Shown piece by piece: positions 4,361 through 64,000 of a DNA stretch of 64,000 nucleotides. The notes beneath the pieces were generated by a model that made no database searches, was not told the origin of the DNA, and saw nothing but the letters and a program-made list of their open reading frames with translations. Source of the stretch: Convolutriloba macropyga (lineage: Eukaryota); contig NC_134470.1 of assembly GCF_964194025.1 (NCBI RefSeq), positions 17,546,001-17,610,000 on the forward strand, written 5' to 3'. Position 1 is the stretch's first letter; each line of letters starts with the position of its first letter. Both the position numbers and the translations under genes were made by a program.

Positions 4361-4373
4361 CTGATTGATTGCA

Positions 4374-10943: not shown

Positions 10944-11521
10944 CCCGGGTCGAGGTTTTATCAAAAAATAATGTAAGATTAGCGATGAATAGCGGTGAAA
11001 AAAAACTTTTTTCACCGCAAAGCGCCTTCATTTTTTAGCGTTGAATGCGGTGAAAGCGGTGAATTTTTGTAAGATTTGCGTTGAAATTAGCGGTGAAAAA
11101 ATTTTTGTTCACCGTATTCACAGGATTTCTTACAAAAAAGAACCTGCCGTACACGGGTACGAACCACTCACCTCCCGCATGTCACCAACTTCATAGTCCA
11201 CTGACCCATCTGTCACTTACTTCAATAATATTTCCTGCGAATTTAAGATAACTTAATTTAAGATTTGCGATTTTAGCGATGAAATTTTTTTCACCGCATT
11301 TTGCTGGTAGCGGTGAAAATTTTTTTCACCGCATTCCTCTGGTAGCGGTGAAAAATTTTCTATCACCGCTTATGCGGTGAAAAAAATTTCACCGCTTAAA
11401 ATTTTTTTTCACCGCATTCATCGCATTGAGCGTGAATTTGAGTAAAAAAAACACTTTTACTCAAATTCACCGCAAATCTTACATCTTTTAGCGATTTTTA
11501 GCGGTGACACCTCGACCCGGG
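10944..11521. mobile_element. Non-autonomous CACTA/EnSpm(CMC)-type element, CCCGGGTCGAGG TIRs, 2-bp TSD AA
   Basis: AA|CCCGGGTCGAGGT...ACCTCGACCCGGG|AA, with many subterminal GCGGTGAA/TTCACCGC repeats in both orientations. Confidence 0.85.
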
Positions 11522-14360: not shown

Positions 14361-17300
14361 ATCACATGAAGGTCCTTCCAGAACGAATATATATAGGGGC
14401 TAACTTCCTTACAGCGGTTCTCGTCGTCTTGGAGGACACAATCTCTAATTTCTTTTAATACTGCGTCCTTACTTGTTAGGACGGCTAAGAAGAATTTTGT
14501 AAATAGTTGGTTTAAGTTACTTTCAAAAATTTCCTCTTTGGATAATTCAATGTCTTGTATTTCGGGTGATGATGAAATTGGGGTGTGAATGTTAGGGCTT
14601 GTACTGGTTGTCGCTATAGGGGTGGATTGGGTGCGGAAAGTTACTTTGGGAGCAGTAGTAGGAGTTGGGGGGTTAGATTGAGGCACTTCTTTTGCGGACA
14701 TTGTTATGTGGTTCACTTTATTTTCTGTTTTTGCGGCTGAATTACAATTAAATTTATTTGGCTGGATTCGTGATGCGGATGCAGTAGTGTTTTTAATCAA
14801 TTGATTTGCAAGGCAATTAAAGTTGGAAATGAATTCAGAATTGTAATTGTTTACTTGTGCTCGAGGAATGAGTGGATTAATTGAGGTATTTGAGTTATTC
14901 GTGCTAATGTTAGCAGGTTTGCAACCGTGGACGCGCGTCATGTTTACTTGTTGGTTATAATTACTGGTTATGTGCCGCTTTTGGAAAGGAATTTTATTCG
15001 CGTGACTAAATAAAGATGTAATTGCGTCGCGAATACGGGAAATTGTTGCTACCATGAATTCCTCATCGTATTGATTGACACTTTTAGCGTTTTGATTTGG
15101 TTGACGCGAAATATAATCAACTAAACCCATTCTGGTACCAGGAATATGTTCGATGTTAAAATCAAATGGTAACAAACGATCAATCCATCGTGTTAATCTA
15201 CTGTTGTAGGATTTATTAGAAGGGTGTGATTTTAGAACTGAAAGAAGTGCTCTGTGGTCTGTTAAAACTGTGAAAGTCTTCCCAAATAAATAATATTTAA
15301 AATATTCAATGGCCCACACCACCCCAAGTAATTCGAGTTCATTTACACTATATCGTTCTTCGTTGCTATTAAGAAAACGAGACGCAAAAGCTACTGTTTT
15401 CCACCCTTCACAATCTAATTGTTCAAGCTCAGCGCCTAAACCTTGGCGAGATGCATCGCATTTGATTCGCGTTTCCAGTGTTGGATTAAAATGAGTGTTT
15501 TCCGTAGCGTTTGCAATAATAGTTTTGATGTGTTCAAAATGTAATTGATGAGTTTCATTCCAAATAAATTTTTCCTTTTTCTTTAATAATGGCCGAAGGG
15601 GATGGCATATTTTGGCAAGATTAGGTATAAATTTGCTTAAGTGATGAACACTACCTAAGAATGATCGTAATTGTTTCAATGTTTTTGGAGCTTTGATTTC
15701 CGCAATTGCCGCTGTTTTAGATTCTATAGGTTTAACACCACTTTGTGAGAATGTGAAGCCAAGCCAATTTATTTGATGTTTTGCGAAATGACATTTACTC
15801 AAATTATTTCGGAGGTTATCGGATTCGAGTTTTTGGAGACATTTGTACACGTATTTGAGGTGCGATTCCTTGGTACCTTTGCCAACTACAATTATGTCAT
15901 CCAGAAAACAGTATCTGTTAGTTAGTCCAACCAATGTGTAATCCATTGCCTTTTGAAACTCAGCCGTCATATCCGTAAGGCCATAAAATCCCGTTTTAAA
16001 ACGATATGTGCCAGTTGCATCGCCGCAGATGATATTAAAATTGCAATGACGTGCGGTATCCGGATGCAGTTTTAATTGACTATAGGCATATTTTAAATCA
16101 ATCGTTGAAAAGTAGACATGATCTCCTAGGTTTGAATTATTAATATGTTGTGAGATTGAATCGATAAGACTATCTATATTTGGCATTTGGTACTTGTTTT
16201 TGTGGATCGCTTTATTTAATATTTTTGAATCAAGAGCTAAATTTACAGATTTGTCCTTTTTGACCGTGATTACAATGGGGGAAATGTAGTTTTTATCCGA
16301 ACATTCTTGTAATTTTTCGATGTGTCCTTGTTCAGAAAGTTTCTTCAGCTCAGCAGATACTTTGTCTAGTAAATTTATAGGAACACGACGGCCCTTTTGG
16401 TGGGATGGAGTATAGTGTTTGTGGAATTTTGAACGAACTGTATGTACTTTGGACTTACCAATTCTGGAGATTAGATCGGGATAATCAAAAGCAATCTGTT
16501 TTTTGATTGGGCAATATTCTTGATCTACCTGATTAATTGTTACATTGTTACTTGATTGATGTATTGAGAGTCCAAGAGCTGGAAACAAATCTCTACCCAA
16601 TAGAGAACGATGTCCGTCTGCCACTACTTGAATTTCTATTGGATTTGCGTACCAATTACTGCTTTGAATTGAAGTTTGAAGAATGCCCACCGTATGAATA
16701 GGTTCGTTTGAAAATGTTTTCATTTGTTTAGGATTCGCTTCGCGTATCCACTTCGGTTTTGAATCATGAGAAATGATGGAGTTTGCCAAGGATTCGTTTA
16801 TTATTGTGCATACGCTGCCCGAATCCACCAAAACATTTGTTGATGTTTTACCAAGGATTACGGGAAGATTGATTGCATCCACTGAAGTTGAGGAATCTGT
16901 TGAAGATACTGCTGCTACACAATTATCTTCATCTGAAGAATAGTTTGACTCCAAAACAGGATCAAAATTAGTCGAAATCTGATTGACATCTTCATTTTGA
17001 TCGTCCTTTTCTACGTTATTGACCCGCGGTTTAGGTTTTGGGTAGGAATTGGGATCTTTAGGTTTTCGGCAAACTTTTGCGAAGTGGTTCTCAATACCAC
17101 AGTTATTGCATCTTTTTCCCCGAGCGGGACATTTATTTCGGTGGTCAGAGGTCCAATTGGATCCACAGAAATGACAGGTTGTTGGCTTTTTCCGTGCTGT
17201 TGTATTCATATTGGAGAAAGGGGTAGCATTTGCGATGCGCATCCGTTGTACTTGATTAACAGTTAAATGTGACTCGGTTTTGCTTGCATTCATTTTTAAT

Positions 17301-18052
17301 TGGTTGAGCGTACCCATCTCGATATTGATCGCTATTGCCAATGTTTTTTCCGGGTCGACTGTTTCCTTAAGGAGCTCCTTTTGAATGATTTCATTTTGCA
17401 TGTTTGCGATAAAGACGTCCCGGATGATCGTGTCTCCTTTATCTCCAAGGTCACAGTTTTCCGAAAGTTCTTTGAGATGTCCATAGAATTTCTCAATAGG
17501 TTCTCCCTTTTGCTGTTTTCGGGTGAGGAAGAGGTATCTATCGAAGGTTATATTGTGGATCCGAATGAAGGTTGTATTGAGAATACCCCACAGATCTTTC
17601 GTTGAAATTGTTTCAAGATTGATGGTCGAATTCTTTGAGTTGAATACGCGCCGACCTTCCATGCCTAAGCTCAAGTACATCAAAGAGGATGCTTTTCGAT
17701 CACATAACTTCCACGGTTTATCACCGCAAAGTATACCAACTGCTGTAACTCGTTGACACTGATTCTTCCACGCTGTTTTTGCTTGTTCCTTGCGGGTACG
17801 TCGGTCTCGCTCTGATTGTGCCGTCGGGTTGTCAACTGCATCTTCATATGCTGGTTCAGGAGGTAGGAGGACATGGTCTGGGGGGTCCAATAAGAGGAGA
17901 TCCACTTCAATTCCTTCTCGGGCGAGAATTGCGAGTTTCAATTGTATTCTCCAAAACTCCCAGCGAATTGGAGGTTCTAGTGTTGCCTTTTCCCAAAAGG
18001 GTTGAATTCCAAGTGGGGATTTGCCGCTGTCCTTTGTCGCTGACTGCGCCAT
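14354..18052 (-). pseudogene. Gag-PR-RT-RNaseH polyprotein (single ORF), cut off before the integrase by a deletion/frameshift
   Basis: Zn knuckles CHFCG..H..C and CNNCGIENHFAKVC, protease LVDSGS, RT IDLKYAYSQL and FLDDI, RNaseH CDASRQG and YSVNELELL. Confidence 0.93.
18040..18051 (-). promoter_or_regulatory. Primer-binding site, tRNA-Ser-like
   Basis: Minus-strand TGGCGCAGTC directly after the LTR CA. It is complementary to the GACUGCGCCA 3' end of tRNA-Ser used by 17.6/297-type elements. Confidence 0.75.
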
Positions 18053-18456
18053 GTTATACTTAATCGTATTGAATACTTTAGGATTCGCGTTGCGAATACT
18101 TGTGTCGAGATTACGATAGGAATTGCTAGGCGAATACACAATAACTTGTGTAATACGAATTCTGATTATTGGAGACGCGGCGCGAATCCGTTGTTAAGTC
18201 TAACTTAAGATTATGAAGAGCGTTTACAGAGTAACTTGAATTCAGATAACTAAATGAAATTATGATTACTTATGATAAACTAGTATGAACAAAATATGAA
18301 ATAATTTAGTAGACTTACGGGAATATTAATATAGGTGAATAAATAGAAGTCATAACTTTTAGTTATAAAACGCATGATATAATTATAGATATAGAGGATA
18401 AATAATTTAGTACACATAGGAGTTTCGATATATAATAGGTATCCATACGTATCACA
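18052..18456 (-). repeat. 5' LTR
   Basis: Direct repeat of 11601-12005, followed on the minus strand by the PBS. Confidence 0.95.
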
Positions 18457-49929: not shown

Positions 49930-50230
49930 CTGAGATGAAAATGATTCAGCATACAAAACCGATATTAGCTAGGAGTTTATTGTTTATTGACAACTTTTCA
50001 TTCTTAACCCGGGCCGAGGCGTACACCCGTATTCCACCGTTATTAAGCGAGAATAAGGATGTAAAGCCAATTCCACTCTTAATTAGCAGGGATAAGAGTG
50101 TAAGAGTGTAATTTTGAGAAAATTACACTTTAATGTACACTCTTTACACTCTTTAATACACCCTTATTACACTTTTAAAAATACACTATAATTACACTCT
50201 TTATTCCACTCTTTATTACACTCTTGAGCG

Positions 50231-53200
50231 AATTAGGTGAAGCAAATGTAGAACTTAATGAAAATCTTTTGTTAATAGCATTTCGAAAAAGACAAGTTAG
50301 AAAGTCTATTTTAGCCCGTTTTGTTGCCCCGATAATACAATTTTTGAAATTGTGTAGAAACAAAAGCAAATAATTTGATTTGTATACAGAATTTTAATGA
50401 AACCTCCAATTAGGTGAAGAAAATGTCGAACTTCATTAAAAACGTTTGTTAACAACTTTTTGAAAAAGACGAATTGAGAAACCTATGTTAGCCCGTTTTT
50501 TGGCCCCGATAATACACTTTTTGAAATCGTGTAGAAACGAAAGCCTATAGTTTAATTTGTATACAGAATTCTCATGAAATCTCCAATTAGGCGAAGAAAA
50601 TGTCGAACTTCATTAAAATTGTTTGTTAACAACTTTTTGAAAAAGACGAACTGAGAAGCCTATGTTAGCCCGTTTTTTGGCCCCGATAATACACTTTTTG
50701 AAATTGTGTAGAAATGAAAGCCAATAGTTAGATTTGTATACAGAATTTTTATGAAATCTCCAATTAGGTGAAGAAAATGTCGAACTTCATTAAAAACGTT
50801 TGTTAACAACTTTTTGAAAAAGACAAATTGAGAAGCCTATGTTAGCCCGTATTGTTGCCTCAATATTGCACTTATTGAAATTGTGTAGAAAAAGAGCCAA
50901 TAGTTTGATTTGTATACAGAATTTTAATGAAATCACCAATTAGGTGAAGAAAATGTCGAAGTTCACTAAAAACGTTTGTTAACAACTTTTTGAAAAAGAC
51001 GAATTGAAAAGTCTATATTAGCCCGTTTTGTTGCCCTGATACTGAATTTTTTGAGATTGTGTAGAAATAAAAGCTAATAGTTTGATTTGTATACAGAATT
51101 TTTATGAAATCTCCAATTAGGTGAAGAAAATGTCGAACTTCATTAAAAACGTTTGTTAACAACTTTTTGAAAAAGACGAATTGAGAATTCTATATTAGCC
51201 CGTTTTGTTGCCCTGATACTGAATTTTTGAGATTGTGTAGAAATAAAAGCCAATAGTTTGATTTGTGTACAGAATTTATATGAAATCTCCAATAAGGTGA
51301 AGAAAATGTCGAACTTCATTTAAAACGTTTGTTAACAACTTTTTGAAAAAGACGAATTGAGAAGTCTATATTAGGCCCTTTTGTTGCCCTGATACTGAAA
51401 ATTTTGAGATTGTTTAGAAATCAAAGCCAATAGTTTGATTAGCCAATAGTTTGATTTGTATACCGAATTTTTATGAAATCTCCAATTAGGTGAAGAAAAT
51501 ATCGAAGTTTGTTAATTACTTTTTGAAAAAGACAAATTGAGAAATCTATATTTTGTCCATTTTGTTGCCCCAATTATGCACTTTTTTAAATTATGTTGAA
51601 ATAAAAGCCAACAGTTTGATTTATATACGGAATTTTAATGAAACCTCCAATTAGGTGAAGAAAATGTAGAACTTTTTAAAATCCTTTGTTAACAACTTTT
51701 TGAAAAAGACGAGTTGAGAAGCCTATGTTAGCCCGTTTTGTTTCCCCGATAATACACTTTTTGAAATTTTGTAGAAATGAAAGCCTATAGTTTAATTTGT
51801 ATACAGAATTCTCATGAAATCTCCAATTAGGCGAAGAAAATGTCGAACTTCATTAAAAACGTTTGTTAACAACTTTTTGAAAAAGACGAATTGAGAATTC
51901 TATATTAGCCCGTTTTGTTGCCCTGATACTGAATTTTTGAGATTGTGTAGAAATAAAAGCCAATAGTTTGATTTGTGTACAGAATTTTTATGAAATCTCC
52001 AATAAGGTGAAGAAAATGTCGAACTTCATTTAAAACGTTTGTTAACAACTTTTTGAAAAAGACGAATTGAGAAGTCTATATTAGGCCCTTTTGTTGCCCT
52101 GATACTGAAAATTTTGAGATTGTTTAGAAATCAAAGCCAATAGTTTGATTAGCCAATAGTTTGATTTGTATACCGAATTTTTATGAAATCTCCAATTAGG
52201 TGAAGAAAATATCGAAGTTTGTTAATTACTTTTTGAAAAAGACAAATTGAGAAATCTATATTTTGTCCATTTTGTTGCCCCAATTATGCACTTTTTTAAA
52301 TTATGTTGAAATAAAAGCCAACAGTTTGATTTATATACGGAATTTTAATGAAACCTCCAATTAGGTGAAGAAAATGTAGAACTTTTTAAAATCCTTTGTT
52401 AACAACTTTTTGAAAAAGACGAGTTGAGAAGCCTATGTTAGCCCGTTTTGTTTCCCCGATAATACACTTTTTGAAATTTTGTAGAAATGAAAGCAAATAA
52501 TTTGATTTGTATACAGAATTTTAATGAAATCTCCAATTAGGTGAAGAAAATGTAGAACTTCCTTAAAAACATTTGTTAATAACTTTTTGAAAAAGACGAG
52601 TTGAGAAGTCTATATTAGCCCGTTTTGTTGCCTCAATAAAGCAATTTTTGAAATTGTGTTGAAATAAAAGCCAATAGTTTGATTTCTATACAGAATTTTA
52701 ATGAAAACACCAATTGGGTGAAGAAAATGTCGAACTTCATTGAAAACGTTTATTAACAACTTTTTAAAAAAGACAAGTTGAGAGTGTATATTAGTCCATT
52801 TTGTTGCCATAATAAAGTAATTTTTGAGTATGTGTGGAACTAAATGCCAGTATTTTCATTTGTTTACAAAATTTTAATGAATTGTCGAATAAGGTGCAGA
52901 AAATGTCCAATTTCGTGGAAAAACCTCTGTCAATAACTTTTTGAAAAAGACGAGTTAGAAAATCTGTGTTAGCCCATTTTGTTGCATTGAAAAAATGCTT
53001 TATATATTTAACAAGTTTGTGTAGATGTAAATGTCAATACTTTGATTTGTTCGCATAATTTTAATGAACCATCGAAATAGGTGAAGAAAATGTCGAAATT
53101 CATGAAAAACCTCTGTTAATAACTTTTTTAAGAAGACGTGTTAGAGAATCTATGTTATCCCTTTTTGTTGTCGTGATAATTTATTCTATGGGTTTATGTA

Positions 53201-54060
53201 GAAGTAAATGCCAATAGTTTGATTTGTTTACAAAGTTTTAATGAACCTTCCAATTAGGTGAAGAAAATGTCGAACTTCATGAAAAACCTATATAAATAAC
53301 TTTTTGAAGAAGACGAGTTAAAAGACTTATATTAGCTCATTCTGCTGCCGTGATAATTTACTTTATGAGTTAGTGTAGAAGTAACTGCAAACATTTTGAT
53401 TTAATTACAAAATTTTAATAAACCGTCGAATTAGGTGAAAAAAATGTTTAACTTCATGAAAAACGTCTGTTACTAACTTTTTGAAGAAGACAAGTTAGGA
53501 GACCTATGTTAGCCCATTTTGTTGCCGTGATAACGTACTTTATGAGTTTGTGTAGAAGTAACTGCAAAAACTTTGATTTAATTACAAAATTTTAAGGAAC
53601 CCTCGAAATAGGTGAAAAAAATGTTTAACTTCATGAAAAACGTCTGTTACTAACTTTTTGAAGAAGACGAGTTAGAAGACCTATGTTAGCCCATTTTGTT
53701 GCCGTGATAACGTACTTTATGAGTGTGTGTAGAAGTAACTGCAAAAATTTTGATTTAATTACAAAATTTTAATAAACCGTCGAATTAGGTGAAAAAAATG
53801 TTTAACTTCATGAAAAACGTCTGTTACTAACTTTTTGAAGAAGACGAGTTAGAGACCTATGTTAGCCCATTTTGTTGCCGTGATAACGTACTTTATGAGT
53901 GTGTGTAGAAGTAACTGCAAAAACTTTGATTTAATTACAAAATTTTAATGAACCCTCGAAATAGGTGAAAAAAATTTTGAACTTCATTAAAAACATTTGT
54001 TAATAACTTTTTCAAGAAGACGAGTTAGAAAGTGTATAATAGCTTATTTTGTTGCCCTGA
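50231..54060 (+). repeat. ~177-bp satellite, ~21-22 copies, with a 710-bp (4-mer) higher-order duplication
   Basis: AATTAGG(T/C)GAAG..AATGT.GAAC at 50231, 50408, 50585, 50762, 50938, 51115 and onward. The variant block at 51421 is repeated at 52131. Confidence 0.95.
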
Positions 54061-55062
54061 TATTGTACTTTCTAGAACGTTTTAGAACCGATCTCGAAAC
54101 TTTTTATTTCTACCCAAAATATCAAGAAAATGGTCGATTCGTGGTCAAAAATTAGTCATTTTTGTCGATTTTGGACAAAATTCTCCCAAATTTTAAGAGC
54201 AAACATATATGTTTTTGGTAGCAAAATAAACTAGAATTTACGCTTCCAACAGCCATATAATTATCTTTTTGAACTATTGCCAAACAAGAGAATGCGAGGG
54301 CAATGTAGAGACCGAAATCAGGGTCGATTTTAGCGAAATTTTCGAATTTTCAAAGTTGTTTAGTTTAATAACTTTTTTGTTACACGACGTTTTTAAAAGT
54401 ATATTATATCATTTTCTTGCCCATTTAATCCTCTTTACGAATATATATGGGTTGAAAAGTTTCGGTTTAATTTCATTGCCTAATTTTTCGATTTTCCAAA
54501 CTTTGTTGAAAATAGGCAAATTTCAGCCAAATTGTCAAAAATCGAGTTTTTATTTCTTTATTTTTTTTAACTTTTTTAACGCCAGGTTGATGCCCCAGTT
54601 CATGCTGATTCCAAAACATATTCATTTTTTAAATTTGGTTCAGTAGTTTTCGAGATATAAGCCTTTTTCGGACGCATACCAGCACCCCCACCGTCCCAGG
54701 GCACCGGGCGCCCACCCGCAAACCTTTTTTTTATGTGTTCCCGTTCGATTTTTGAAAACCATCTTACTTAGTTAGATTCTATATGAAACCAGCTTTCCAA
54801 TGATATACTTTTTAAATTTCAAGTTTTGAAATGCTCACTTCATAGTTGTTCACCATAAAGCAGGGTATGAAAATTTCGTTTGGTGTGTTGCCTCAGAGGT
54901 AACGTGACATGCTAATTGTGAGGCAACACTGGTGGAGACGGCATCACCTGCATCCCCTCACTGAACTGCCATGAATAGAGCATTTGAAATTGCGCAACGT
55001 ATACGAAAGTTCCGAAAGCTCACACAGTAAGCCGGAAATAGTTTAATTATTTCCAATAGGTC

Positions 55063-55220
55063 GATGTACGGCAATAGGTGGAATTGAATGGGTCGATGTA
55101 ATAGGTCGATGCACAGGTCGATGTACGGCAAAGACGATGGGTCGAACGATGGGAGGAACGATGGGCTGGTCGAATTAGTTCCCATAGGTCGATGTACAAT
55201 AGGTCGATGTACGGCAAAGA
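55063..55220 (+). repeat. Short GGTCGATG(TACGGC) repeats upstream of the SGNH gene
   Basis: About 6 copies of GGTCGATG within 160 bp. Confidence 0.75.
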
Positions 55221-55415
55221 CGGAACGGACCCATACAAAAGTTATATCGTTGGAAAGCTCTCGTCAAGACGAAATCGATAGGCTATATGGCAGCACCCAA
55301 TACGAGCTTACTATACTATATCTGTACTATTATACTATTGGTTGGAAGTTTGTGATGTATTAGTCGCTAAGCGTTTATAGTTGGTGTATCGTTTTTAGAT
55401 ATTGCTGTTGAAAAC

Positions 55416-56060
55416 ATGGACCGTAAACGAATCGGCAGACCTTATGCTTCCGCTAATGCACCACCCAAAAAAGCCCTCAAGCCACTTTTCGCGGATGACC
55501 AAATCAATGGCAGGGTGACAAAGTTGCAACCGAACGGGAGGAACGCTGAATTCATTTTTAACAATTTTGTTGGTGAAAGTGTGCATACTGCAATAGTAGG
55601 GGACTCAATCTTTGATAGTGTTTGTATAAGGAACTGCGTCACATATTCATTGTCAGGCGGACGAATCGAACAATTTCATCTGTTACTCGATACCCTCTCT
55701 GTATATAGGAACGTCATCTTAGCTGTCGGTGGCAACAATTTGTCAAATTGGGGTGAACCCGGAGAGGATCCATCAGTTGTTGTTGATAAATAGCTGAGAA
55801 GCTTGTACAATGCCATCAGGGGCCTTGAAAATCGCCCAAAAGTGATAGTGTGCTCAGTGTTGAAAAGGAATCGCAGCCATTGGAACATCCAACGATTCAA
55901 TGCGGTGCTAAGGCACTCGCAGCTGCCCTTCTTTAAACTTCATCAAGAAGTTTGCAAAAGCAATTTGTTTCTGAGCGACGGTGTCCACCTTAATTTGAAA
56001 GGTAGAAAAGCATTGGCTTGTGCAATGAATAAAGTTGTGAGAGAGCATCAGCTGCACTAA
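55416..56060 (+). pseudogene. SGNH/GDSL hydrolase, one in-frame TAG at 55791-55793
   Basis: AIVGDSI (block I), SLSGGRI (II), LAVGGNNL (III), SDGVHLN (V). ORFs 55416-55793 and 55803-56060 are the same frame. Confidence 0.85.
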
Positions 56061-56304
56061 TTTGATTGACTATTGTTTTCGTTGTTTGTGTTCGTGCAGC
56101 AATTTCCTTCAATTTGTTTTATTAAATCTTTGGTGTTTGTTGACAACTAAGTGGATCTTTTACTAATACAATTCGCAATTTCTTGTATATACTCATCAAG
56201 GTTAATTCATCGTCTTACCTGCAAAATTTTTTTCGAGCATCTGTTAATTTAATCGCTTGCTGAAGCCCTGAAAAGTGGGATAATTTTGATGTGGTTTTAA
56301 CATA

Positions 56305-57310
56305 GGATTTTATCCGCTTCGCTTGGTACAAAGATTCAAATTTCAGGCTCGTGTTTGCGGGTGTCTCTGCCTGCATCGGTATGTCCTCTCAGCGGATTTT
56401 ATCCGCTTCGCCCGTTACAAACAGATTCATTAATTAGGCTCGTGTTTGCGGGTGTTTCTGCCTGCATCGTTATGTCCTCTCAGCGGATTTTATCCGCTTC
56501 GCCCGGTACAAAGATTCAAATTTTAGGCTCGTGTTTGCGGGTGTTTCTGCCTGCATCGCTATGTCCTCTCAGCGGATTTTATCCGCTTCGCCCGGTACAA
56601 AGATTCAAATTTTAGGCTCGTGTTTGCGGGTGTCTCTGCCTGCATCGCTATGTCCACTCAGCGGATTCTATCCGCTTCGCCCGTTACAAACAGATTCATT
56701 GATTAGGCTCGTGTTTGCGGGTGTTTCTGCCTGCATCGTTATGTCCTCTCAGCGGATTTTATCTGCTTCGCCCGGTACAAAGATTCAAATTTTAGGCTCG
56801 TGTTTGCGGGTGTCTCTGCCTGCATCGGTATGTCCACTCAGCGGATTCTATCCGCTTCGCCCGTTACAAACAGATTCATTAATTAGTCTCGTGTTTGCGG
56901 GTGTTTCTGCCTGCATCGTTAAGTCCTCTCAGCGGATTTTATCCGCTTCGCCCGGTACAGAGATTCAAATTTTAGGCTCGTGTTTGCGGGTGTCTCTGCC
57001 TGCATCGCTATGTCCACTCAGTGGATTCTATCCGCTTCGCCCGTTACAAACAGATTCATTAATTAGGCTCGTGTTTGCGGGTGTTTCTGCCTGCATCGTT
57101 ATGTCCTCTCAGCGGATTTTATCCGCTTCGCCCGGTACAAAGATTCAAATTTTAGGCTCGTGTTTGCTGGTGTCTCTGCCTGCATCGCTATGTCCACTCA
57201 GCGGATTCTATCTGCTTCGCCCGTTACAAACAGATTCATTAATTAGGCTCGTGTTTGCGGGTGTTTCTGCCTGCATCGTTATGTCTACTCGGCCTATTTT
57301 ATCCGCTGCG
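56305..57310 (+). repeat. Tandem array of mostly alternating 89/91-bp units (180-bp dimer), ~11 monomers, each with palindrome AGCGGAT-TTT-ATCCGCT
   Basis: Unit start AGGCTCGTGTTTGC at 56345, 56436, 56525, 56614, 56705, 56794, 56885 (AGTCTC variant), 56974, 57065, 57154, 57245. Confidence 0.95.
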
Positions 57311-57550
57311 CGCAATAAAAATAGATTGCATAATTAGGCTTGTTTGCGGTTGATTTTGCTTTTTGAAAATTAAATTGTTCTTTCGAGGTTTTTTCCTGTT
57401 GACATTAAATTAAGTGAGAATTAGTGAATCCTTTGGTTTTATGGTTTAATTTAGTTGACTTTTGGTCGTTGAATTTAAATGACTTTGTTACCATGTCTAA
57501 ATGAGACTCGTTCAGCTAATGGTCTAATTCGTTTACTATTAATTTTAGAG

Positions 57551-59290
57551 ATGCCTTTGAAAATTGAGTTTGTGTTCCTTACGGAAGATTGCCAAGTGTT
57601 AAAATTGAGTTTGTTTGATCCTCGGTGGCCCAAAACCCTGCAAATAAATGAGCGTATGAAACTAAATGATGACGATAAAACATCGCTAATGATTGATGGC
57701 TCTGAGGTTGATTGCGTTCTACTGAAGCATGGTCCACCAGGTGCGATGGACGTGGAGTTCAGAAAAAATCAAGAGATCTATGGTGCGTTTGCGGATCAGT
57801 GTAGTGGTAATTTGGACGTCACCCCACGTAAGGGAGCGCGCTGGGCTGGCAGTAGTTTGACACCAGTTGAGAGTTTTGGACCTGAAAGTCCCAGGGTTCT
57901 GGTTAGATCTCTTGCTTTCGTTTTCTTTATTTTCATGAACGGTGTAAAAATAAAATTCTTTTTGCAACGTGGTAGGACTTTGTTCATCAAGTTTTTGTAG
58001 TATCTTGGCCTTAATAAGAAATTTTGTTGCTTTGTTTGATCTCTTTCCAATGTCGGTTACGTTGCCCTGTTTAGAAATGCTCAAATCATGAAAAGATTGT
58101 GGAAGTCCTCAACGAAGACAAACGTATGTTCAATGAACTTCTTCGAGTCTATAAGAAAACAGTACAGGATTGCAATAAAAAATTGGAAAGCCAGCTACAA
58201 CATTTCAAAGAGATTGTGAGTATATGATTTTCACTGGTCTTGTACAAGTTTTTGCTCATAAGCACTTCACAAATGTTCGACTTTAATCTTCAAATATGCA
58301 GTTTGAAATTATTTGGCTGTTCAGATCTGGAAATTTAATTCGATGTGGGTTGTTTTCTGGATGAAATCAATTTCTTATAGAGTTTTTTGACTTTTAGAAA
58401 GAACTCAAGAAATTAGATGACTCTGTGGACGAGGAGACCAGTGAAGTGCTACCTAGTTTCTATGGAGACGTTGATGTTGACAATCTTCCTGTACCCTCAA
58501 CTCCCGATGAGTTCGGAAGAGTGCTAAGAACAGCACTTTGGGGAGAAACGGGTCTTGAGCGAGAAATAATTTCTCCGAGAGAAAGCGAGGTGCGGAAACC
58601 CGCATCTCCGAAAAGAACTAAGCTTTTCAAAGGTATTTACAAGTACTGTTTTTCAAGAAACTTAAAATTTTCAATATGGGTTCCCTCAAAAAATTTGCAG
58701 ACCCTACACGCTCATCAAGGCAAAAAGTGGTACGGAACTTTTAGCAGCTTTCGGATTTTTCGAAAAATTGGATTTTATTGGTTTTCTCTGTCTTCCCCAA
58801 AACGAAGAGCTGAAATTGTTAAGGTGTTTTGTATGTTCAAGGGCTTGTGAAGAAGCATTTCCCCCCTCGTCTGTGGCCTGAGGCTTACAACGACGCCCGT
58901 TCGTCTGCGAATAGATCGGGCATGGATGCACTGCGGTACCGAAAAAGGAAATCGGACCCATTCTGGTGCGCACAAATGAAAGAAAAGGCAATGTCTAAGA
59001 GAAACAAACAGACAAAAAGGCGACCGAATGAGGAGTCTGACGGTCAAAATTTAAGCAATACACAAACTGATGAGAGTGATTCTGAGCCAGGAAATGTTGA
59101 ATGGAGCCTCAAAGTCTGGTGCGCACAAATGAAAGAAAAGGCAATGTCTAAGAGAAACAAACAGACAAAAAGGCGACCGAATGAGGAGTCTGACGGTCAA
59201 AATTTAAGCAATACACAAACTGATGAGAGTGATTCTGAGCCAGGAAATGTTGAATGGAGCCCTCAAAGTCTTTTGCAATTCTCTATTTGA
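57551..59290 (+). CDS. BEN-domain-like protein 1, 4 exons (57551-57901, 58075-58215, 58398-58632, 58842-59290)
   Basis: GT-AG introns join in frame. Coiled-coil, then DEFGRVLRTALWG...ISP...PASPKRTKLFK|GLVKKHFP...AYNDARSSANRSGMD, a BEN-like helical pattern. Confidence 0.7.
58962..59268 (+). repeat. 153-bp tandem duplication in the last exon of BEN-like gene 1
   Basis: TCTGGTGCGCACAAATGAAAG... at 58962 and 59115. WCAQMKEK...NVEWS occurs twice. Confidence 0.95.
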
Positions 59291-59901
59291 TTTGATGACT
59301 TGATATTTTGTGCTGTTATTAGACTTTGATTAATGGCCGCGAAATAATAGCTGAGGCTGTTATTGTCCTTCTCTTGGTTTTTTTTTCGCGTGCGTGACGT
59401 TATCTTTCACTTTTAGGTGAGCGAGTATTTTTGGTCACACGTGATTTTCCTCACTCTCAAATGATTTCCTCGTTATTAAATTGACTTTTCTTTATTTTAA
59501 AGAGATGAGGTAAAATGAGTGTTTGACACACTACTTGAAAGTTACTATAGAACAGTTAATAGCAGGAGCAGCTAATAAATTATACAGATACATAATTAAA
59601 ATTTAACATCCTTTTTCGCGCGGCTGTTTTCTGGCAATCTGCCAGCTATGTTTGGTTTTCTTTTGTTTATTGAATTTTGGATTGACTCTAATTGCAGAAA
59701 ACATTACGATTCCATCTAATGGCTACCTCAAATTTTTAGATTGATTATACTTGACTCATTGTTCGTTTATTCTTCAAACTGGCGGTTAAAACGTTAAAAT
59801 TTAGACTGATTCTAAACATTTTGAAATTTTTGGTTTCTCTATTTCGTTGCAAACACAATCGAACGTAGTAAAATAATTTAAAAGTTTTTAGATCGTTGAA
59901 A

Positions 59902-61540
59902 ATGAAACCACCTTCGAGAACTGATCGCAAGAAAAGCACCAACCTATTTGATTCGGAGGCCGAAAGAGAAGACAGTATCCGATCCAGTATTTTAACAAAT
60001 AACACGGCGTGGCTCTTCGTTGACAATAAAGAGCTGATTTTGATTACTGTAAGCAGCTTTAAATGGCCACCCAAGACTAAGCCATCTGAAAAGCTAAGTC
60101 TAATCGAAGGTGATAGTTTTGACCTGCGATTCAAAGATGGAAATGTGTCCTGTCGTTTGTTGGCAAAAGGAAACATGAAAAAAGTTGAAGAACTCATGAA
60201 CAACTATCAGCAGGAGCTAGATGCAGGTAAACGGCCGTCTGAATTGCGAAAAACAGTGCTGGCGAATCCTAAGGCACCTGTTGTCGATGAGGTTAATTTC
60301 TTGTGTCGAGGACGTGCACCCGTGATGAACAGTACCGTAGTCTCTCTTGGTAAACCAGCAGGCGTCGAAAAGTCAAAAGCCTCCAATTCTGCGTTATCTC
60401 AGCCAGTCATTTCAGCAAAGAAAAAGAACAATACGGTAAAATGTGACCTTTTTTAACTAATTACAAATGGCATCTTAGAGATTGTTAAAGGCCTCTTTGA
60501 AATTGTCGAAAACTATGAGACTGGTAAACGGTAGAAGGGCAAACTGATAAATGTCGTTGCTGTGCTTTGAAATATTTGCGCTTTTTTAGCCTGAGCCCGT
60601 TCTTTCTCAACCTTCTACTTCTGCGATCACCAGCTCAAGCACACTTCCAACCATTGCGGACAACGCAGTCGATTGTGGGCCAAATTGCCGTCTTCTTCAG
60701 GAATATCTAGATGAGCATGTTGTTGAGATGAATAGTTGGATGAAAGCATTTGAGGAGCTGAAGAAAGCGGACGAAAAAAGACGGGCAAACATATGCGCAA
60801 GAATTGACGCTAAGGTACCCCATCGCTCATTAAGTTTTTCTACTTTTTATGAAATGAACCTACTTGCTAGCCTTTTCAAAAGATCTGAAATTCTCAAGCA
60901 TCATAGAGGCTTAAGTTCTTGTGAATAAATTTCACAGAGTTTGTTACCTGTAAATGTTTAGGCTACCCAATTGAAAGAAACTCGCCTCTTAGATATTCAT
61001 GGGTTCCAAAGCATCGATGACTATCCTTCGCGGAGCGCAGGTATCACAGCAGTCATGCACAACGGTGAAGCCTTATGATGATTCACGCTGGCTCAGATGT
61101 CGGAAAGCTGGGTAGAGCATTGTTTGAGAAGTTGTTTCCGGAAAATGAGCGTGGAAATTACATTCTGGCACCAAAAAGACATGAGGCTGATCGTAGACTT
61201 GAAGCTCCCAGTGAAATTCTCGACAAGTTTACGAGTATGTTTTTAAAATTAGACATGAAGCCTTCCTTTCCATTAGCATTTTCAAAAATCCCTCTTGCGC
61301 GTTATTGGCATTTTAAAAAGATCTCTCTTGCGTGTTAAAATTTTAACCTGCAAAAACCAGCACTTCAAGACAGGTAATCGGCATAGAAGTTAATAAGAGA
61401 TTGTCTTCTTGCTTTCAGAGGTTGTGCAGCAGAAGTACCCTGACACTCCTGGGCTCGCTTTTGAGAAAGCCAGAAAATCGGCAAATCAATACGGCAAGGA
61501 TTGCCGAGGCCGACATTCCAATGTAGAAGAAAATGAGTGA
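59902..61540 (+). pseudogene. BEN-domain-like protein 2, 4 coding exons (59902-60435, 60590-60814, 60962-61234, 61419-61540), 1-nt frameshift near 61071
   Basis: GT-AG introns in compatible phases. DVGKLGRALFEKLFP...ILAPKR...LEAPSEILDKFT|KVVQQKYP...AFEKARKSANQYGKDCR. Paralogous to gene 1. Confidence 0.7.
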
Positions 61541-61935
61541 GGATTCTGCCTCAATTGCGAGCATTCTGCCTGAAAATTTCATTTTCCATTAAGGAGTGCT
61601 GTTTTATTTTTAATTGATCTCGAACGAACTTTGTAGCAATTATTGTAAACGCGTTGGTCTCTATGCAAAAATTTTGCTTGAACATTTTGATTTTTTGAGT
61701 GACTTTTACGCCCTTGACTATCTGCGTTTTAAGTGATCATAATTTCTCTCATTCAAAATTTCAAGTTCCTAATTTCAATTGGCGGCAATTTATTGCTGAA
61801 AGTCAAATGATAAGTGCGCCAAAATTGAAAATAATTTTTCACTTTAAATCTTAATAGCGGTTTTTACTAACCTCTAATGATCAGGCTGCAATTTGTAACT
61901 GATTAGAGCTCCCACTAGTTGTTCGAGAGCAATTT

Positions 61936-62058
61936 TCCCGACGTTAGTCAGTTTTGTTTAGTGAACTTGAACTAACCTTTCGTAACTTTCTTATATAGTC
62001 TCCCGACGTTAGTCGGTTATCTTTTGTGAACTTGAACTAACTTTCTGTAACTTTCTTA
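61936..62058 (+). repeat. ~65-bp direct repeat x2 upstream of the SET-transposase ORF
   Basis: TCCCGACGTTAGTC...GTGAACTTGAACTAAC...GTAACTTTCTTA occurs twice. Confidence 0.8.
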
Positions 62059-62253
62059 GATCCAGTTTGTTTACTTTGTTTAAACATTCGCTGTTTTGCC
62101 AGCGTGAGAAAATTTGTATTGTCTATTGATCCTGAATTAAACATTTTATTAAAACAATGATTACGTTTCCATAAAAGAACTTGGTTAAATAGTTTTTCGA
62201 AATTATCTCTATGACGGGCATAACGTAACCACTGGTTAAGTTTTTCAAGTGAT

Positions 62254-63057
62254 ATGATTACATGCGAAGATTTAGTGATTGCGGATGGACAAGTTGTGCG
62301 TCAAGTTTTAACCAGTTTTAATGTCTGTCCTCAAATGATGCTGCCCCTGAACAGCTTCGAACAGTTCGAGAGCCGCATGAAATTCGACAAACAGCTTTCA
62401 AAGGCTTATTTTTCGCTAAAAGAACTATATGAGCTTTGTATTGCGTCAGGTTTTAAAATCTTGCCCGACAACTATGGTGGCTATGGCCTCTTCAACAATA
62501 CGGGAAAGGTATTAAAACCTTCATTGCAACCCCTTAGACCTTTTCCTGTGGGCCCAATTGAAACTGTTCCTCTTGAACTGCAAAATGAGATGTCCGATTT
62601 GTCTGTAATGCGTGGCGAGCGTGAGCAGGATGAAGTAGTACTGCTTGGCCCCATTCGTTTTGCAAATCACTCTTGTTCGCCTAATACAAAGTTTTTCTTA
62701 GGATACACAAGTTCTTTTCTCCCCCACAACAAGTGCGTGTTTCTTCAAGTAATAGACTCCATAGGGCTTGGTGAAGAAATAACTGTGAGTTACGGATCAA
62801 ACTACTTCAAAGACGGTAGTCTTAAATGTAGGTGCCCACATAAGGAAAAGCACGTGCCGCTAAACAGAGAAAATTTAGAACCAACGACTCCTCGATTCCA
62901 AAGTCCTGATGTCCCCACTCAGCTGACATTTTCGTCAAGTACCACAAGTGCAATCTTAGGATCTGGTGAGAGTAGTTCCAACTACACTGCAAGTCAGTCT
63001 AGCATTGGTACACCGACTGATTGTGAACTTTCGGCAAAGAGAAAATTTAGAAATTAA
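62254..63057 (+). CDS. SET domain, SUV4-20/Set9-like (H4K20 methyltransferase family); N-terminal part of a probable SET-transposase fusion
   Basis: SGFKILP, SDLSVM, LLGPIRFANHSCSPNTKF and GEEITVSYGSNYF...CRC parallel SUV420H GFEILP / NDFSVM / LGPAAFINHDCRPNCKF / GEEISCYYG..FF...CEC (recalled from memory, not aligned by tool). Confidence 0.85.
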   Translation: MITCEDLVIADGQVVRQVLTSFNVCPQMMLPLNSFEQFESRMKFDKQLSKAYFSLKELYELCIASGFKILPDNYGGYGLFNNTGKVLKPSLQPLRPFPVGPIETVPLELQNEMSDLSVMRGEREQDEVVLLGPIRFANHSCSPNTKFFLGYTSSFLPHNKCVFLQVIDSIGLGEEITVSYGSNYFKDGSLKCRCPHKEKHVPLNRENLEPTTPRFQSPDVPTQLTFSSSTTSAILGSGESSSNYTASQSSIGTPTDCELSAKRKFRN

Positions 63058-64000
63058 CGGAAAAGGCGGGTCAAAAGAAGAATCTTAGAAGGTTCGAGTC
63101 GCGAAATCAGAACCTTCATACACCAGATAGATGCCACTCGCTCTTCGGAAGTTGAAACTGAGGAAACAGATACACAAGTGAGTTCGCAATGTTCTGCTGA
63201 CGATTACCTTGAAACCGAAGCCTCTTTTGAACCCGAACCTGAATTTGACCTCCCAATTGGAGAAGAATCTGAGGTGACCTCCAATGATTATGACGAAGAT
63301 GATCTTGATGACAGTGATGGCACTGATGTGGCAGAAAGAAGTTTCCAGTTTTCTTCGAATCCGTTAACTTGTAACTCGAATGTAACTGTTCATAATGCGT
63401 CAATGGGTTTATTTGCAGTTGCTGCTCGACATTGTCTACCCGACGAAGCTCTGTTCGATTTGCTGAAATGGCAAAAAATTATTCATCCCCATGACAATGT
63501 GCCTACTCACAATTTTATAAAAAATGAAACCAAGAAATTAACGGATCTCTACGTAAAGGACACAGAAAAAAATGCCAGCGGAGAAGTTATTTTTCTTAAC
63601 TTTGCAGAAAAACTAAAGGAGAAAGTAGAAAAGTACATCAACGAAATTATAGATTACGCTAACCCAGAAACCGAAACGGATCTCAAGCTAACAAGTCTTT
63701 TCGATGACGGGACAATCAACGTGAAACTAATTTTAAACATAGATGGAGTTGAAGTTCGAAAGTCGAGTGATTGCTCAGCCTACCCTGTTTGGGTTGCTCT
63801 TGCTGATCTGCCGCCAAAATTAAGAGCTTCATTTGACAACATCTTTCTTTGCTCATTGTGGTACGGAAAAGGAAAAGTTTTCTGGGACCCTATATTTAAA
63901 CACTACAGATCTAAACTTGCGAAACCCCAGAACATTTGTTACAAAGGGAGACTATACGAAATCAGTTTTACAACAATTTTTCTCGTGGTAGACCTTGTGT
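63058..64000 (+). CDS. CACTA/EnSpm-type DDE transposase, N-terminal half, running off the window; same frame as the SET ORF
   Basis: Open frame absent from the ORF track: RKRRVKRR, acidic linker, ARHCLPDEALFDLL, LILNIDGVEVRKSSDCSAYPVWVALADLPPKLRASFDNIFLCSLWYGKGK (first Asp 63742), and VVDL (second Asp 63991). Confidence 0.88.

What the first reader, a model, noticed from the sequence alone, without database searches (positions are those of the whole stretch)
62254..64000. SUV4-20-like SET domain in frame with a CACTA transposase: a probable histone methyltransferase-transposase fusion
Seen in sequence: after the TAA at 63055-63057 the same frame stays open to the window end, through a basic stretch and an acidic linker into a CACTA/EnSpm catalytic core (LILNIDG...YPVWVALADLPPKLR...LWYGKGK...VVDL). 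The stop splits one basic, NLS-like run (AKRKFRN*RKRRVKRR), which suggests a single nonsense mutation in a fused gene. Established: the SET motifs best fit the SUV4-20/Set9 H4K20 family. The familiar SET-transposase fusion, SETMAR, is a domesticated primate mariner gene with a different SET type. Inference: a transposon family carrying its own H4K20 writer on the transposase could mark donor or target chromatin or steer repair, since H4K20me2 recruits 53BP1. I do not know of a described example.
Basis: partly seen in the sequence, partly recalled or inferred. Interest (0 to 1): 0.95.

Follow-up and report, generated by a model that had tools for sequence, protein, structure and literature searches.

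The report
Transposase fused to a histone methyltransferase
The window ends inside a 20-kb DNA transposon whose transposase gene begins with a Suv4-20-type histone-methyltransferase (SET) domain. This copy is switched off by one stop codon, but near-identical intact copies lie elsewhere in the same genome, so the fusion is a real, selectively kept feature of a mobile-element family.

Summary
Window 62254-63054 encodes a SET module whose sequence profile, predicted fold and active-site residues are closest to SUV4-20 (KMT5B/C). After the TAA at 63055-63057 the frame stays open for 771 more codons, past the window end, through a RAG1/Transib-like DDE transposase of the CMC (EnSpm/Mirage/Chapaev) group.

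Three 99%-identical copies in the same assembly carry CAA (Gln) at that codon and encode one 1039-aa protein. About 20 diverged relatives (25-70% identity) keep the same SET-linker-transposase order. The SET and transposase trees agree, and the SET part is as constrained as the transposase part (pN 0.13 vs 0.14, synonymous sites saturated).

The element is defined. It has 12-nt inverted ends CCCGGGYCGAGG, 2-bp target duplications, a 5' end at window 50008 and a length of 19.9 kb in an intact copy. It holds three tandem arrays and a GDSL-like accessory gene. Three small derivatives (MITEs) lie in the same window.

The ends are not CACTA, so the element is Mirage-like rather than CACTA proper. 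SET genes carried as separate accessory genes by transposons are already published. I found no report of an in-frame SET-transposase in an active family. What the SET domain does is untested.

The parts
50008..50019 (+). 5' terminal inverted repeat CCCGGGCCGAGG of the large element. The flanking AA at 50006-50007 is one half of the presumed 2-bp target duplication.
   Evidence: The motif occurs 8 times in the window against 0 expected, and as +/- pairs elsewhere. The intact copy has an identical 5' end from the first base, with an unrelated flank. The inverted copy of the motif ends the element in L008, L009 and L005.
50020..50230 (+). 5' subterminal region with short ACACTCTT / TTCCACCGTTA motifs in both orientations.
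   Evidence: Read directly. The same motifs fill the 3' subterminal region of L008 and L009 and of MITE3.
50231..54071 (.). Tandem array, 177-nt unit, about 22 copies.
   Evidence: TRF. The array is present at the same place in the L004, L007, L008 and L009 copies.
55416..56060 (+). Accessory ORF resembling a GDSL/SGNH hydrolase. In this copy it is broken by an in-frame stop at 55791-55793, caused by a 3-nt insertion.
   Evidence: The intact 213-aa versions in L008 and L005 match Lipase_GDSL(_2) weakly, E 1e-4 to 7e-4, below the curated cut-off. The ORF is kept between lineages.
56305..57311 (.). Second tandem array, 180-nt unit, unrelated to the other two arrays.
   Evidence: TRF and blastn between the arrays.
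57479..61540 (+). Plus-strand ORFs or exons of unknown function. They appear as collinear islands kept at about 68-86% DNA identity with the 71%-lineage copy L004.
   Evidence: No Pfam or PDB match. The GT...AG intron between 61237 and 61419 was read by eye only.
61936..62058 (+). Two 65-nt direct repeats just upstream of the fusion ORF (promoter region?).
   Evidence: Also present in L002, L008 and L009.
62254..63054 (+). SET part of the fusion ORF. Codons 1-200 form a Suv4-20-type module (helical N-domain, SET, post-SET Cys). Codons 200-267 are a Ser/Thr-rich linker.
63034..63081 (+). Basic, NLS-like run AKRKFRN(Q/*)RKRRVKRR.
   Evidence: A KR-rich column is kept across the family.
63055..63057 (+). 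TAA, the private nonsense mutation of this copy (CAA, Gln268, in intact copies).
63058..64000 (+). Acidic linker and the first half of the transposase, cut by the window end. The first catalytic Asp (D497) is at 63742-63744 and the second (D580) at 63991-63993.
   Evidence: invariant columns; RAG1/Transib-like fold.
37191..37489 (.). 299-bp MITE of the same family: 5' end plus 3' end of the large element, TSD TG.
   Evidence: The last 66 nt are 94% identical to the L008/L009 3' end. The first 156 nt are 76% identical to the window 5' end.
28228..28601 (.). 374-bp MITE of a sister subfamily (TIR CCCGGGTCGAGG), TSD TT.
10944..11521 (.). 578-bp MITE of the same sister subfamily, TSD AA.

Best explanation
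SHOWN. Window 50008-64000 is the left 14 kb of a roughly 20-kb (19.9 kb in the intact copy; more than 23 kb here) cut-and-paste DNA transposon of the CMC (EnSpm/Mirage/Chapaev) group. It has 12-nt inverted ends, 2-bp target duplications, three internal tandem arrays and a GDSL-like accessory gene. Its transposase is a single 1039-aa protein with four parts in order: an N-terminal Suv4-20-type SET module, a Ser/Thr-rich and basic (NLS-like) stretch, an acidic linker, and a RAG1/Transib-like DDE core. The core has D497, D580 and E839, a CxxC motif at 599-602 and an Hx3H motif at 815-819. The window copy is a young, dead member of this family. It carries a private CAA>TAA change at codon 268, seven further private amino-acid changes, and a stop in the accessory gene. 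The fusion is old and inherited vertically within the transposon lineage, and the SET part is under purifying selection.

INFERRED (about 0.45). The SET module is an active lysine methyltransferase with a Suv4-20-like pocket. The transposase brings it to the nucleosomes at the element's ends or at the target. There it writes H4K20me2/3 or a similar mark. That mark could channel repair of the excision break, mark new insertions, or restrain the element's own expression.
For: Intact 99%-identical copies. P0185, P0194 and P0195 are 1039 aa with Gln at position 268. Codon 268 is TAA here against CAA in L008 and L009, and the ORFs are 99.2-99.5% identical without indels.

Family-wide architecture. 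P0003, P0006, P0013, P0016 and P0017 are fusions. Nine of ten long representatives found with the SET piece alone carry SET together with Transposase_21 and/or DUF1258. P0084, P0113, P0071 and P0053 pass a curated Pfam cut-off.

SET type. SUV420H2 scores 85 bits against 37 for the next SET family. The AF2 model has pLDDT 86. Foldseek ranks 1-14 are all SUV4-20, with query TM 0.6-0.7 against about 0.4 for other SETs. The equivalents of Suv4-20h2 Ser161, Tyr217 and Cys185 are invariant (S117, Y180, C141). Phe191 is F147 (residue roles from PMC3874154).

Transposase. D, D, CxxC, MH, Hx3H and FE(S/N)AN are invariant. The AF2 model has pLDDT 84. The top 45 Foldseek hits are RAG1, RAGL or Transib, E 1e-12, with about 600 columns aligned. 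This agrees with the published CMC-Transib kinship (PMC12730594).

Selection. Against the 71% lineage, pN is 0.13 for SET, 0.27 for the linker and 0.14 for the transposase, with pS about 0.75. Between the intact copies, L008 has 14 synonymous and 4 non-synonymous private changes. The window copy has 0 synonymous and 8 non-synonymous.

Co-descent. TE-borne SETs form one side of a 100/100 branch against 16 Suv4-20-like proteins that have no transposase. The transposase tree recovers the same major clades (A 97/93, B2 100/100, B1+B2 99/97).

Mobility. The TIR motif is found 8 times in the window against 0 expected. Four elements with both flanks in hand (three MITEs and the full L008 copy) all have matching 2-bp duplications (AA, TT, TG, TT), a chance of about 1.5e-5 for all four. 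L008 and L009 are identical up to the TIR and unrelated beyond it. The four 90% clusters examined hold 90-113 ORF fragments each.
Against: No transcript, protein or activity data exist. Catalysis and substrate are inferred from conserved residues only.

In the window's subfamily the fourth post-SET zinc ligand is His (CRCPH), not Cys. In a large sister clade the NH-motif His is Ser (NSDC) and the Phe191 position is Tyr. In Suv4-20h1 that Phe-to-Tyr change strongly reduced activity (PMC3874154). Part of the family may therefore not be a Suv4-20-like enzyme.

H4K20me2 favours 53BP1/NHEJ. That would not by itself help a cut-and-paste element regain its donor copy, so the selective benefit is unclear.

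The host organism is unidentified. Current activity is inferred from 99% identity and intact ORFs, not observed.

The 'canonical Suv4-20' set in the tree was chosen by architecture, and only two members carry names. The tree is unrooted.
Confidence: 0.85

Rival explanations
1. The SET module is kept as a non-catalytic chromatin tether. It would bind the H4 tail or the nucleosome and steer integration, or retention of the transposase, to particular chromatin, as chromodomains do for chromovirus integrases. It would not write a mark.
For: The whole Suv4-20-like module, including the helical N-domain, is conserved. The sister clade has NSDC in place of NH(S/D)C and Tyr at the Phe191 position. In Suv4-20h1 that change greatly lowered activity (PMC3874154). 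Non-catalytic roles of SUV420H1 on nucleosomes are published (title of 10.1101/2023.03.17.533220).
Against: The residues that position the lysine and line the pocket (S117, Y180, N138, C141) are invariant across 19 diverged members. That is more than binding alone would seem to need. The window's own subfamily keeps NH and Phe.
Confidence: 0.3
2. The SET module methylates a non-histone substrate. Candidates are the transposase itself (autoregulation, as reported for SETMAR) or a host repair or silencing factor.
For: SET enzymes commonly have non-histone substrates. SETMAR automethylation is published (PMC2566874, listed). The fusion places a Lys/Arg-rich run next to the SET module.
Against: The pocket residues specific to Suv4-20 recognition of H4K20me1 are kept. 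Nothing found here points to another substrate.
Confidence: 0.15
3. This is not a transposon protein but a host gene. Either it is a domesticated SET-transposase fusion of the SETMAR kind, or a host SET gene lies by chance upstream of a transposase.
For: SETMAR shows that such fusions can arise by exon capture.
Against: The ORF lies inside an element with TIRs and TSDs and has MITE derivatives. It is multicopy, with many decayed copies and several diverged subfamilies in one genome. The SET clade is separate from the transposase-less Suv4-20-like proteins. SET and transposase co-diverge.
Confidence: 0.02
4. The stop at 63055 is functional or not real. Either the copy makes a separate SET protein and a separate transposase (or uses read-through), or the T is a sequencing error.
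For: A 267-aa SET protein could be made from this copy. A single-base error cannot be excluded from the sequence alone.
Against: All three 99% copies and the 97% copy read CAA. The copy carries seven other private amino-acid changes, no synonymous ones, and a second inactivated gene, which fits decay. The next ATG in frame comes only after the NLS-like run. The contig has about 51x coverage according to its name.
Confidence: 0.04

Closest known systems
SETMAR / Metnase (primates)
   Same: One polypeptide with an N-terminal SET domain and a C-terminal DDE-type transposase.
   Different: SETMAR is a single-copy host gene made when an Hsmar1 mariner inserted downstream of an existing SET gene, and its transposase is crippled (DDN). 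Its SET is of another type (H3K36-associated). Here the fusion sits inside a multicopy element with TIRs and TSDs. The transposase is CMC/RAG1-like with all catalytic residues, the SET is Suv4-20-like, and the fusion is family-wide and old.
Transposons carrying a SET gene as an accessory gene: HarbingerS, Phytophthora MuDR, some Helitrons, and red-algal Plavaka PAG2 (DNA methylase + SET)
   Same: A mobile element carries its own SET-domain protein. Plavaka also belongs to the EnSpm/CMC-related group and is a giant (17-19 kb) element with arrays (PMC12730594; bioRxiv 10.1101/2025.02.11.637652).
   Different: In those elements the SET is, as described, a separate gene. Here it is the N-terminus of the transposase itself. 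The hosts also differ: oomycetes, red algae and plants there, a probable animal here (a NIDO-domain gene lies next to one copy).
Mirage / EnSpm (CACTA) / Chapaev = CMC transposons
   Same: [quoted passage not shown] Pfam DUF1258 (Mirage) and Transposase_21 (CACTA) matches in family members. A short TSD (2 bp), a large element with subterminal repeats, and more than one gene.
   Different: The termini are CCCGGG...CCCGGG, not CAC(TA)...GTG. No CMC family with a SET domain on the transposase was found in the searchable literature.
SUV4-20H1/H2 (KMT5B/C), fission-yeast Set9
   Same: Helical N-domain, SET and post-SET architecture. The F/L-S-I/V-M lysine-channel peptide with the Ser161 equivalent, Tyr217, Phe191, and the YG..FF......C.C post-SET signature.
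   Different: About 22-25% identity. The TE-borne SETs form a separate clade from the transposase-less Suv4-20-like proteins. They have no C-terminal HP1-binding tail. The fourth zinc ligand is His in this subfamily.
Chromoviruses (Ty3/Gypsy with a chromodomain integrase); KDZ/Plavaka elements with TET/JBP; VANDAL anti-silencing factors
   Same: A mobile element carries a chromatin reader, writer or eraser that acts on its own chromatin context.
   Different: A different element class and a different module. None of them is a histone lysine methyltransferase fused to a DDE transposase.

Membership tests
CMC (EnSpm/CACTA-Mirage-Chapaev) transposase superfamily | DDE triad on an RNase H-like core | tested here: met
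   D497, D580 and E839 (P0185 numbering) are invariant in 18 sequences. The predicted fold matches RAG1/RAGL/Transib over about 600 columns, E 1e-12.
CMC (EnSpm/CACTA-Mirage-Chapaev) transposase superfamily | [quoted passage not shown] | tested here: met
   C599-x2-C602 and H815-x3-H819 are invariant, and E839 follows 20 residues later.
CMC (EnSpm/CACTA-Mirage-Chapaev) transposase superfamily | Match to Pfam Transposase_21 or DUF1258 above the curated cut-off | tested here: inconclusive
   For the window copy, the 314-aa fragment gives E 0.046 and 0.11, and the full 771 aa give no hit. Relatives pass the cut-off: P0084 (Transposase_21 42 bits against 28.6; DUF1258 38.2 against 33.1), P0113, P0071 and P0053.
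CMC (EnSpm/CACTA-Mirage-Chapaev) transposase superfamily | Short TSD (2-5 bp in the CMCT clade, PMC12730594) | tested here: met
   A 2-bp TSD in 4 of 4 elements with both flanks.
CACTA/EnSpm in the narrow sense | Termini 5'-CACTA...TAGTG-3' (or CAC...GTG) and a 3-bp TSD | tested here: not met
   The termini are CCCGGGYCGAGG and the TSD is 2 bp. The CACTAG at 61913 is internal.
Mirage group | DUF1258-type transposase (Majorek 2014, PMC3985635) and a 2-bp TSD (the TSD length is my recollection of Repbase, not checked) | tested here: inconclusive
   DUF1258 is the better Pfam hit in 7 of 9 relatives, and the TSD is 2 bp. No reference Mirage sequences were available for a tree.
SUV4-20 / KMT5B-C type SET domain | SET fold with the family's helical N-flank and post-SET region, closest to SUV4-20 among SET families | tested here: met
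   Profile against the PDB: 85 bits against 37. Foldseek ranks 1-14, TM 0.6-0.7.
SUV4-20 / KMT5B-C type SET domain | Active-site configuration: Ser161 H-bond donor, Phe160-Met163 channel, Tyr217, Phe191 pocket (PMC3874154) | tested here: met
   L116-S117-V118-M119, Y180 and F147 in the window protein. S117 and Y180 are invariant in 19 members. The Phe191 position is Tyr in the sister clade.
SUV4-20 / KMT5B-C type SET domain | Orthology with the host's Suv4-20 gene | tested here: not met
   The TE-borne SETs are separated from 16 transposase-less Suv4-20-like proteins by a 100/100 branch. They are a sister or derived lineage, not the host orthologue.
SUV4-20 / KMT5B-C type SET domain | H4K20me1 to me2(/me3) methyltransferase activity | not testable with these tools
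   Needs an enzyme assay.
SETMAR-type domesticated host-transposase fusion | Single-copy host gene, no TIRs around it, immobile, transposase under host-type constraint | tested here: not met
   Multicopy, with TIRs, TSDs, MITEs and decayed copies.
Autonomous DNA transposon | Intact transposase ORF between TIRs flanked by a TSD, and several near-identical copies at unrelated sites | tested here: met
   The L008/L010 copy is 19,933 bp with TT...TT duplications, an intact 1039-aa ORF and an intact accessory ORF. L008 and L009 share the element and have unrelated flanks.

The most novel reading that the evidence does not exclude
An active animal DNA transposon family has made a Suv4-20-type H4K20 methyltransferase part of its transposase. 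The enzyme that cuts and pastes the element would then also write a histone mark on the nucleosomes it lands on or leaves. This could set repair-pathway choice at the excision break, or install heterochromatin-type marks on new copies as self-restraint. It would be the first natural 'chromatin-writing transposase'. It would also imply that SET plus transposase is a functionally favoured combination reached twice, here and in SETMAR.
Probability: 0.35. Interest if true: 0.85.

Novelty: new variant of a known kind. Interest (0 to 1): 0.72.

Why it matters
Transposons are usually seen as targets of histone methylation, not as carriers of the enzymes. A few elements are known to carry a SET gene alongside the transposase. 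Here the writer is covalently joined to an apparently competent DDE transposase. It has stayed joined through deep divergence (down to about 25% identity) and is as constrained as the catalytic core. This argues that the SET module serves transposition or the element's survival.

The family offers a tractable natural system: an intact 1039-aa ORF, defined 12-nt ends and ready-made 300-bp MITE substrates. With it one can ask how a local histone mark affects excision, repair and integration. It can also show whether the primate SETMAR combination reflects a general synergy rather than an accident. Finally, it extends the list of chromatin modifiers captured by mobile elements (TET/JBP, DNMT, SET) to a probable animal host.

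Tried and rejected
1. CACTAGTTG at window 61913, followed by two 65-nt repeats, looked like a CACTA terminus. I rejected it. Homology with other copies runs 12 kb further upstream, and no inverted partner exists.

2. Finding the 5' end by walking the 97% copy (L002 to L007) failed, because that locus still starts inside the 177-nt array. The end was found through a 12-mer shared with the 3' end of L005.

3. The host organism was not identified:
- No source names appear on any family member.
- The accessions are not in the paper library.
- A search with the window's LTR-retrotransposon pol gave only unnamed close hits and hits below 30% to nematodes and Artemia.
- There are no Rfam or tRNA hits in the window.

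4. The profile search with the fusion alignment added only two named proteins, both transposase-less Suv4-20 homologues (Adineta ricciae, Diatraea saccharalis).

5. A BAH-like C-terminal domain is hinted at by two weak local Foldseek matches. Profile searches of the last 140 aa against the PDB and Pfam do not support it.

6. The accessory ORFs at 57479-61540 have no Pfam or PDB relatives. The GDSL-like ORF has no PDB hit by sequence.

7. The apparent SET-less relatives P0010 and P0015 start inside the linker of the clade-A fusions. They are most likely broken copies, not a SET-less sister group. P0245 and P0020 are genuinely SET-less and distant, and served as the outgroup.

8. The three tandem arrays are not inverted copies of one another.
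Full report
**Observation**

The ORF 62254-63057 (267 aa plus TAA) exists as described. The same frame has no further stop up to the last full codon of the window. An exact-sequence look-up of the 267-aa product returned the parent contig, a 638-kb contig of ENA assembly ERZ25071359 (L001; window position = L001 position + 52253; identity over the overlap checked). On it the frame continues for 771 codons in all and ends ...KHFEHD.

Piece 1 matches Pfam SET (E 4.7e-8). Its best solved relatives are SUV420H2 and SUV420H1.

On its own it is only a borderline match to DUF1258 and Transposase_21 (E 0.046 and 0.11). As a full 771-aa piece it matches nothing in Pfam.

**Is it one gene?**

Yes. A search with the 771-aa piece found a 97% copy that reads ...AKRKFRNQRKRRVKRR... 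across the stop position. It also found several single ORFs carrying both SET and the transposase region at 29-71% identity.

The 90%-identity cluster of that copy has 101 members. Among the 40 members read are three ORFs of exactly 1039 aa (267 + 1 + 771) on three other contigs. They are 99% identical to the window pieces and have Gln at position 268. At the DNA level, codon 268 is TAA here and CAA in L008 and L009. The 3120-nt ORFs differ at only 17-27 positions and have no indels.

Assigning changes to lineages gives the window copy 8 private changes, all non-synonymous. The intact copy L008 has 14 synonymous and 4 non-synonymous changes. The 97% copy (L002) is broken differently, because its two called ORFs overlap in different frames. 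The window copy is therefore a recently dead member of a young family.

**How wide is the family?**

A full scan of 1.84 billion representatives with the SET piece alone gave 813 hits. Near the top are many proteins of about 1000 aa with the SET at residues 1-200. Nine of the ten tested carry SET together with Transposase_21 and/or DUF1258, and several pass the curated cut-offs. Lower-ranked hits with the SET at residues 130-250 and no transposase look like ordinary Suv4-20 homologues.

Sources are ENA assemblies, Logan assemblies of read runs, and one NCBI genome (GCA_013332895.1). None carries a name.

**The SET module**

A profile of 19 family members scores SUV420H2 at E 4e-23 (85 bits). 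The next family (KMT2C/D) scores 2e-8 (37 bits). The AlphaFold model is confident (pLDDT 86, pTM 0.84). Its 14 best PDB matches are all SUV4-20 structures and cover the helical N-domain as well. Query TM is 0.6-0.7, against about 0.4 for other SET enzymes.

The residues that define the unusual Suv4-20 pocket are known for Suv4-20h2 (PMC3874154). They are the Phe160-Met163 channel with Ser161, plus Phe191 and Tyr217. In the window protein they correspond to L116-S117-V118-M119, F147 and Y180 (alignment). S117, Y180, N138, C141, C192 and C194 are invariant in the family.

There are two caveats. This subfamily has CRCPH where Suv4-20 has CxCxxC. A large sister clade has NSDC instead of NH(S/D)C and Tyr at the Phe191 position.

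**The transposase**

Invariant columns give D497, D580, C599-x2-C602, D-x-M-H (680-683), E739, H815-x3-H819 and E839. [quoted passage not shown] On that pattern E839 is the catalytic Glu.

The AlphaFold model of residues 362-1039 (pLDDT 84) matches RAG1, amphioxus RAGL and Transib in the 45 best PDB hits. E-values reach 1e-12 with about 600 columns aligned. DUF1258 is the Mirage group and clusters with Transposase_21 (PMC3985635).

**The element**

Homology with other copies runs far upstream of the ORF, so the CACTAG at 61913 is internal. A 12-mer, CCCGGGCCGAGG, lies at window 50008. It also lies, inverted, just beyond the 3' arrays of a 44%-identity lineage. In the window the motif CCCGGGYCGAGG occurs 8 times against 0 expected. 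Six of these form three +/- pairs 299-578 bp apart. These pairs are MITEs, each flanked by a matching dinucleotide (AA, TT, TG).

MITE3 is made of the 5' and 3' ends of the large element. The two intact copies end in the inverted motif. They are identical up to it and unrelated beyond it.

Fetching the upstream part of one intact copy gave its 5' end. It is identical to window 50008 onward, with an unrelated flank and a TT/TT duplication. The total length is 19,933 bp.

From left to right the element holds:
- the 5' TIR;
- subterminal ACACTCTT-type motifs;
- a 177-nt array;
- a GDSL/SGNH-like ORF (213 aa when intact; weak Pfam support; broken here by a 3-nt insertion);
- a 180-nt array;
- several conserved plus-strand ORFs or exons of unknown function;
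- two 65-nt repeats;
- the SET-transposase ORF;
- a 174-nt array;
- subterminal motifs and the 3' TIR.

The window copy runs from 50008 past the window end. It is longer than 23 kb, because its 3' array has not ended at L001 20785.

**Selection and history**

Against the 71%-identity lineage, synonymous sites are saturated (pS about 0.75). pN is 0.13 in the SET module, 0.27 in the linker and 0.14 in the transposase. The SET part is thus as constrained as the catalytic core.

In a maximum-likelihood tree the 18 TE-borne SETs sit on one side of a 100/100 branch. On the other side are 16 Suv4-20-like proteins without a transposase. The transposase tree of the same 18 proteins, rooted with two SET-less CMC transposases, recovers the same main clades and sister pairs. 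The simplest reading is one old capture of a Suv4-20-like module, followed by vertical descent of the fused gene within the transposon lineage.

**What is known**

SETMAR is the textbook SET-transposase fusion. It is a single-copy domesticated gene with a mariner transposase and a different SET type.

Transposons that carry a SET gene are published: HarbingerS and Phytophthora MuDR (Repbase Reports, cited in PMC12730594), some Helitrons, and the EnSpm-related Plavaka elements of a red alga. In Plavaka the accessory gene PAG2 has DNA-methylase and SET domains (bioRxiv 10.1101/2025.02.11.637652). In those cases the SET is described as a separate gene.

Four full-text searches found no description of a SET domain fused in frame to the transposase of an active element. 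Repbase Reports and subscription journals are not in the library, so this absence is not proof.

**Mechanism**

Shown: the architecture, the mobility hallmarks, the conservation and the nature of the lesion.

Inferred: that the SET module is active, and that it acts on H4K20 of nucleosomes at the element's ends or at targets. The benefit is open. H4K20me2 recruits 53BP1 and ORC1, and H4K20me3 marks silent repeats (general knowledge). The mark could therefore help safe repair of the excision break, or act as self-restraint. A non-catalytic tethering role and a non-histone substrate remain real alternatives.

**Verdict**

The finding is real and its core interpretation is right. It is a new variant of known kinds: a CMC transposon, and a transposon-borne SET. 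It is worth experimental follow-up.

Noticed in passing
window 51-8600 (+ strand): A compact run of same-strand ORFs. One of them (614-1669) matches the Pox_A32 packaging ATPase (E 1e-9). This looks like a Polinton/Maverick-type element or a virus-like insertion. The other ORFs have no Pfam match at E 0.001.
   Followed up: partly
window 12816-18139 (- strand): An LTR-retrotransposon pol (RT, RNase H, integrase) in two ORFs of 1260 and 502 aa. Close relatives (83-95% identity) sit in clusters of 166-252 members from ENA assemblies. It is therefore a high-copy young family in the same genome.
   Followed up: partly
window 10944-11521, 28228-28601, 37191-37489: Three MITEs with the same 12-nt inverted ends as the large element and 2-bp target duplications. 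Two belong to a sister subfamily (T instead of C at TIR position 7). A degenerate relative lies at L006 15975-16400.
   Followed up: yes
L001 13239-20785; also L002, L004, L005, L006, L008, L009 downstream of the ORF: The 174-nt array unit is 76-83% identical between element lineages whose transposases share only 44-71% amino-acid identity and whose synonymous sites are saturated. It is better conserved than neutral DNA. It could be binding sites, the result of concerted evolution, or a shared satellite. In L005 part of it is inverted.
   Followed up: partly
window 55416-56060: The element's GDSL/SGNH-like accessory gene (GDS, GGNN and DGVH motifs seen by eye, weak Pfam support in intact copies) is conserved across lineages. 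In this copy it is interrupted by a 3-nt insertion that creates a stop at 55791-55793.
   Followed up: partly
P0185 residues about 900-1039 (beyond the window; L001 about 12700-13117): The beta-rich C-terminal domain of the transposase is conserved (ending FEHD/FEHS). Two weak local Foldseek matches to BAH-domain proteins (ZMET2, SHL; E 0.02-0.08) may concern it, though the query region matched was not reported. If so, it could be a chromatin reader next to the writer. Sequence profiles do not support this.
   Followed up: partly
window 62254-64000 and L001 to 13120: All 8 substitutions private to this copy are non-synonymous, counting the nonsense change, and none lies in the SET module. The intact copy L008 has 14 synonymous and 4 non-synonymous private changes.
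   Followed up: yes
window 35337-35654: A G-rich 165-nt repeat (about 2 copies) containing a long G run. It coincides with the strongest GC skew of the window (34001-36000, +0.275).
   Followed up: no
window 58962-59271: A 153-nt perfect tandem duplication (99% identity) inside one of the element's unknown ORFs. It repeats the peptide ...SDSEPGNVEWS....
   Followed up: no
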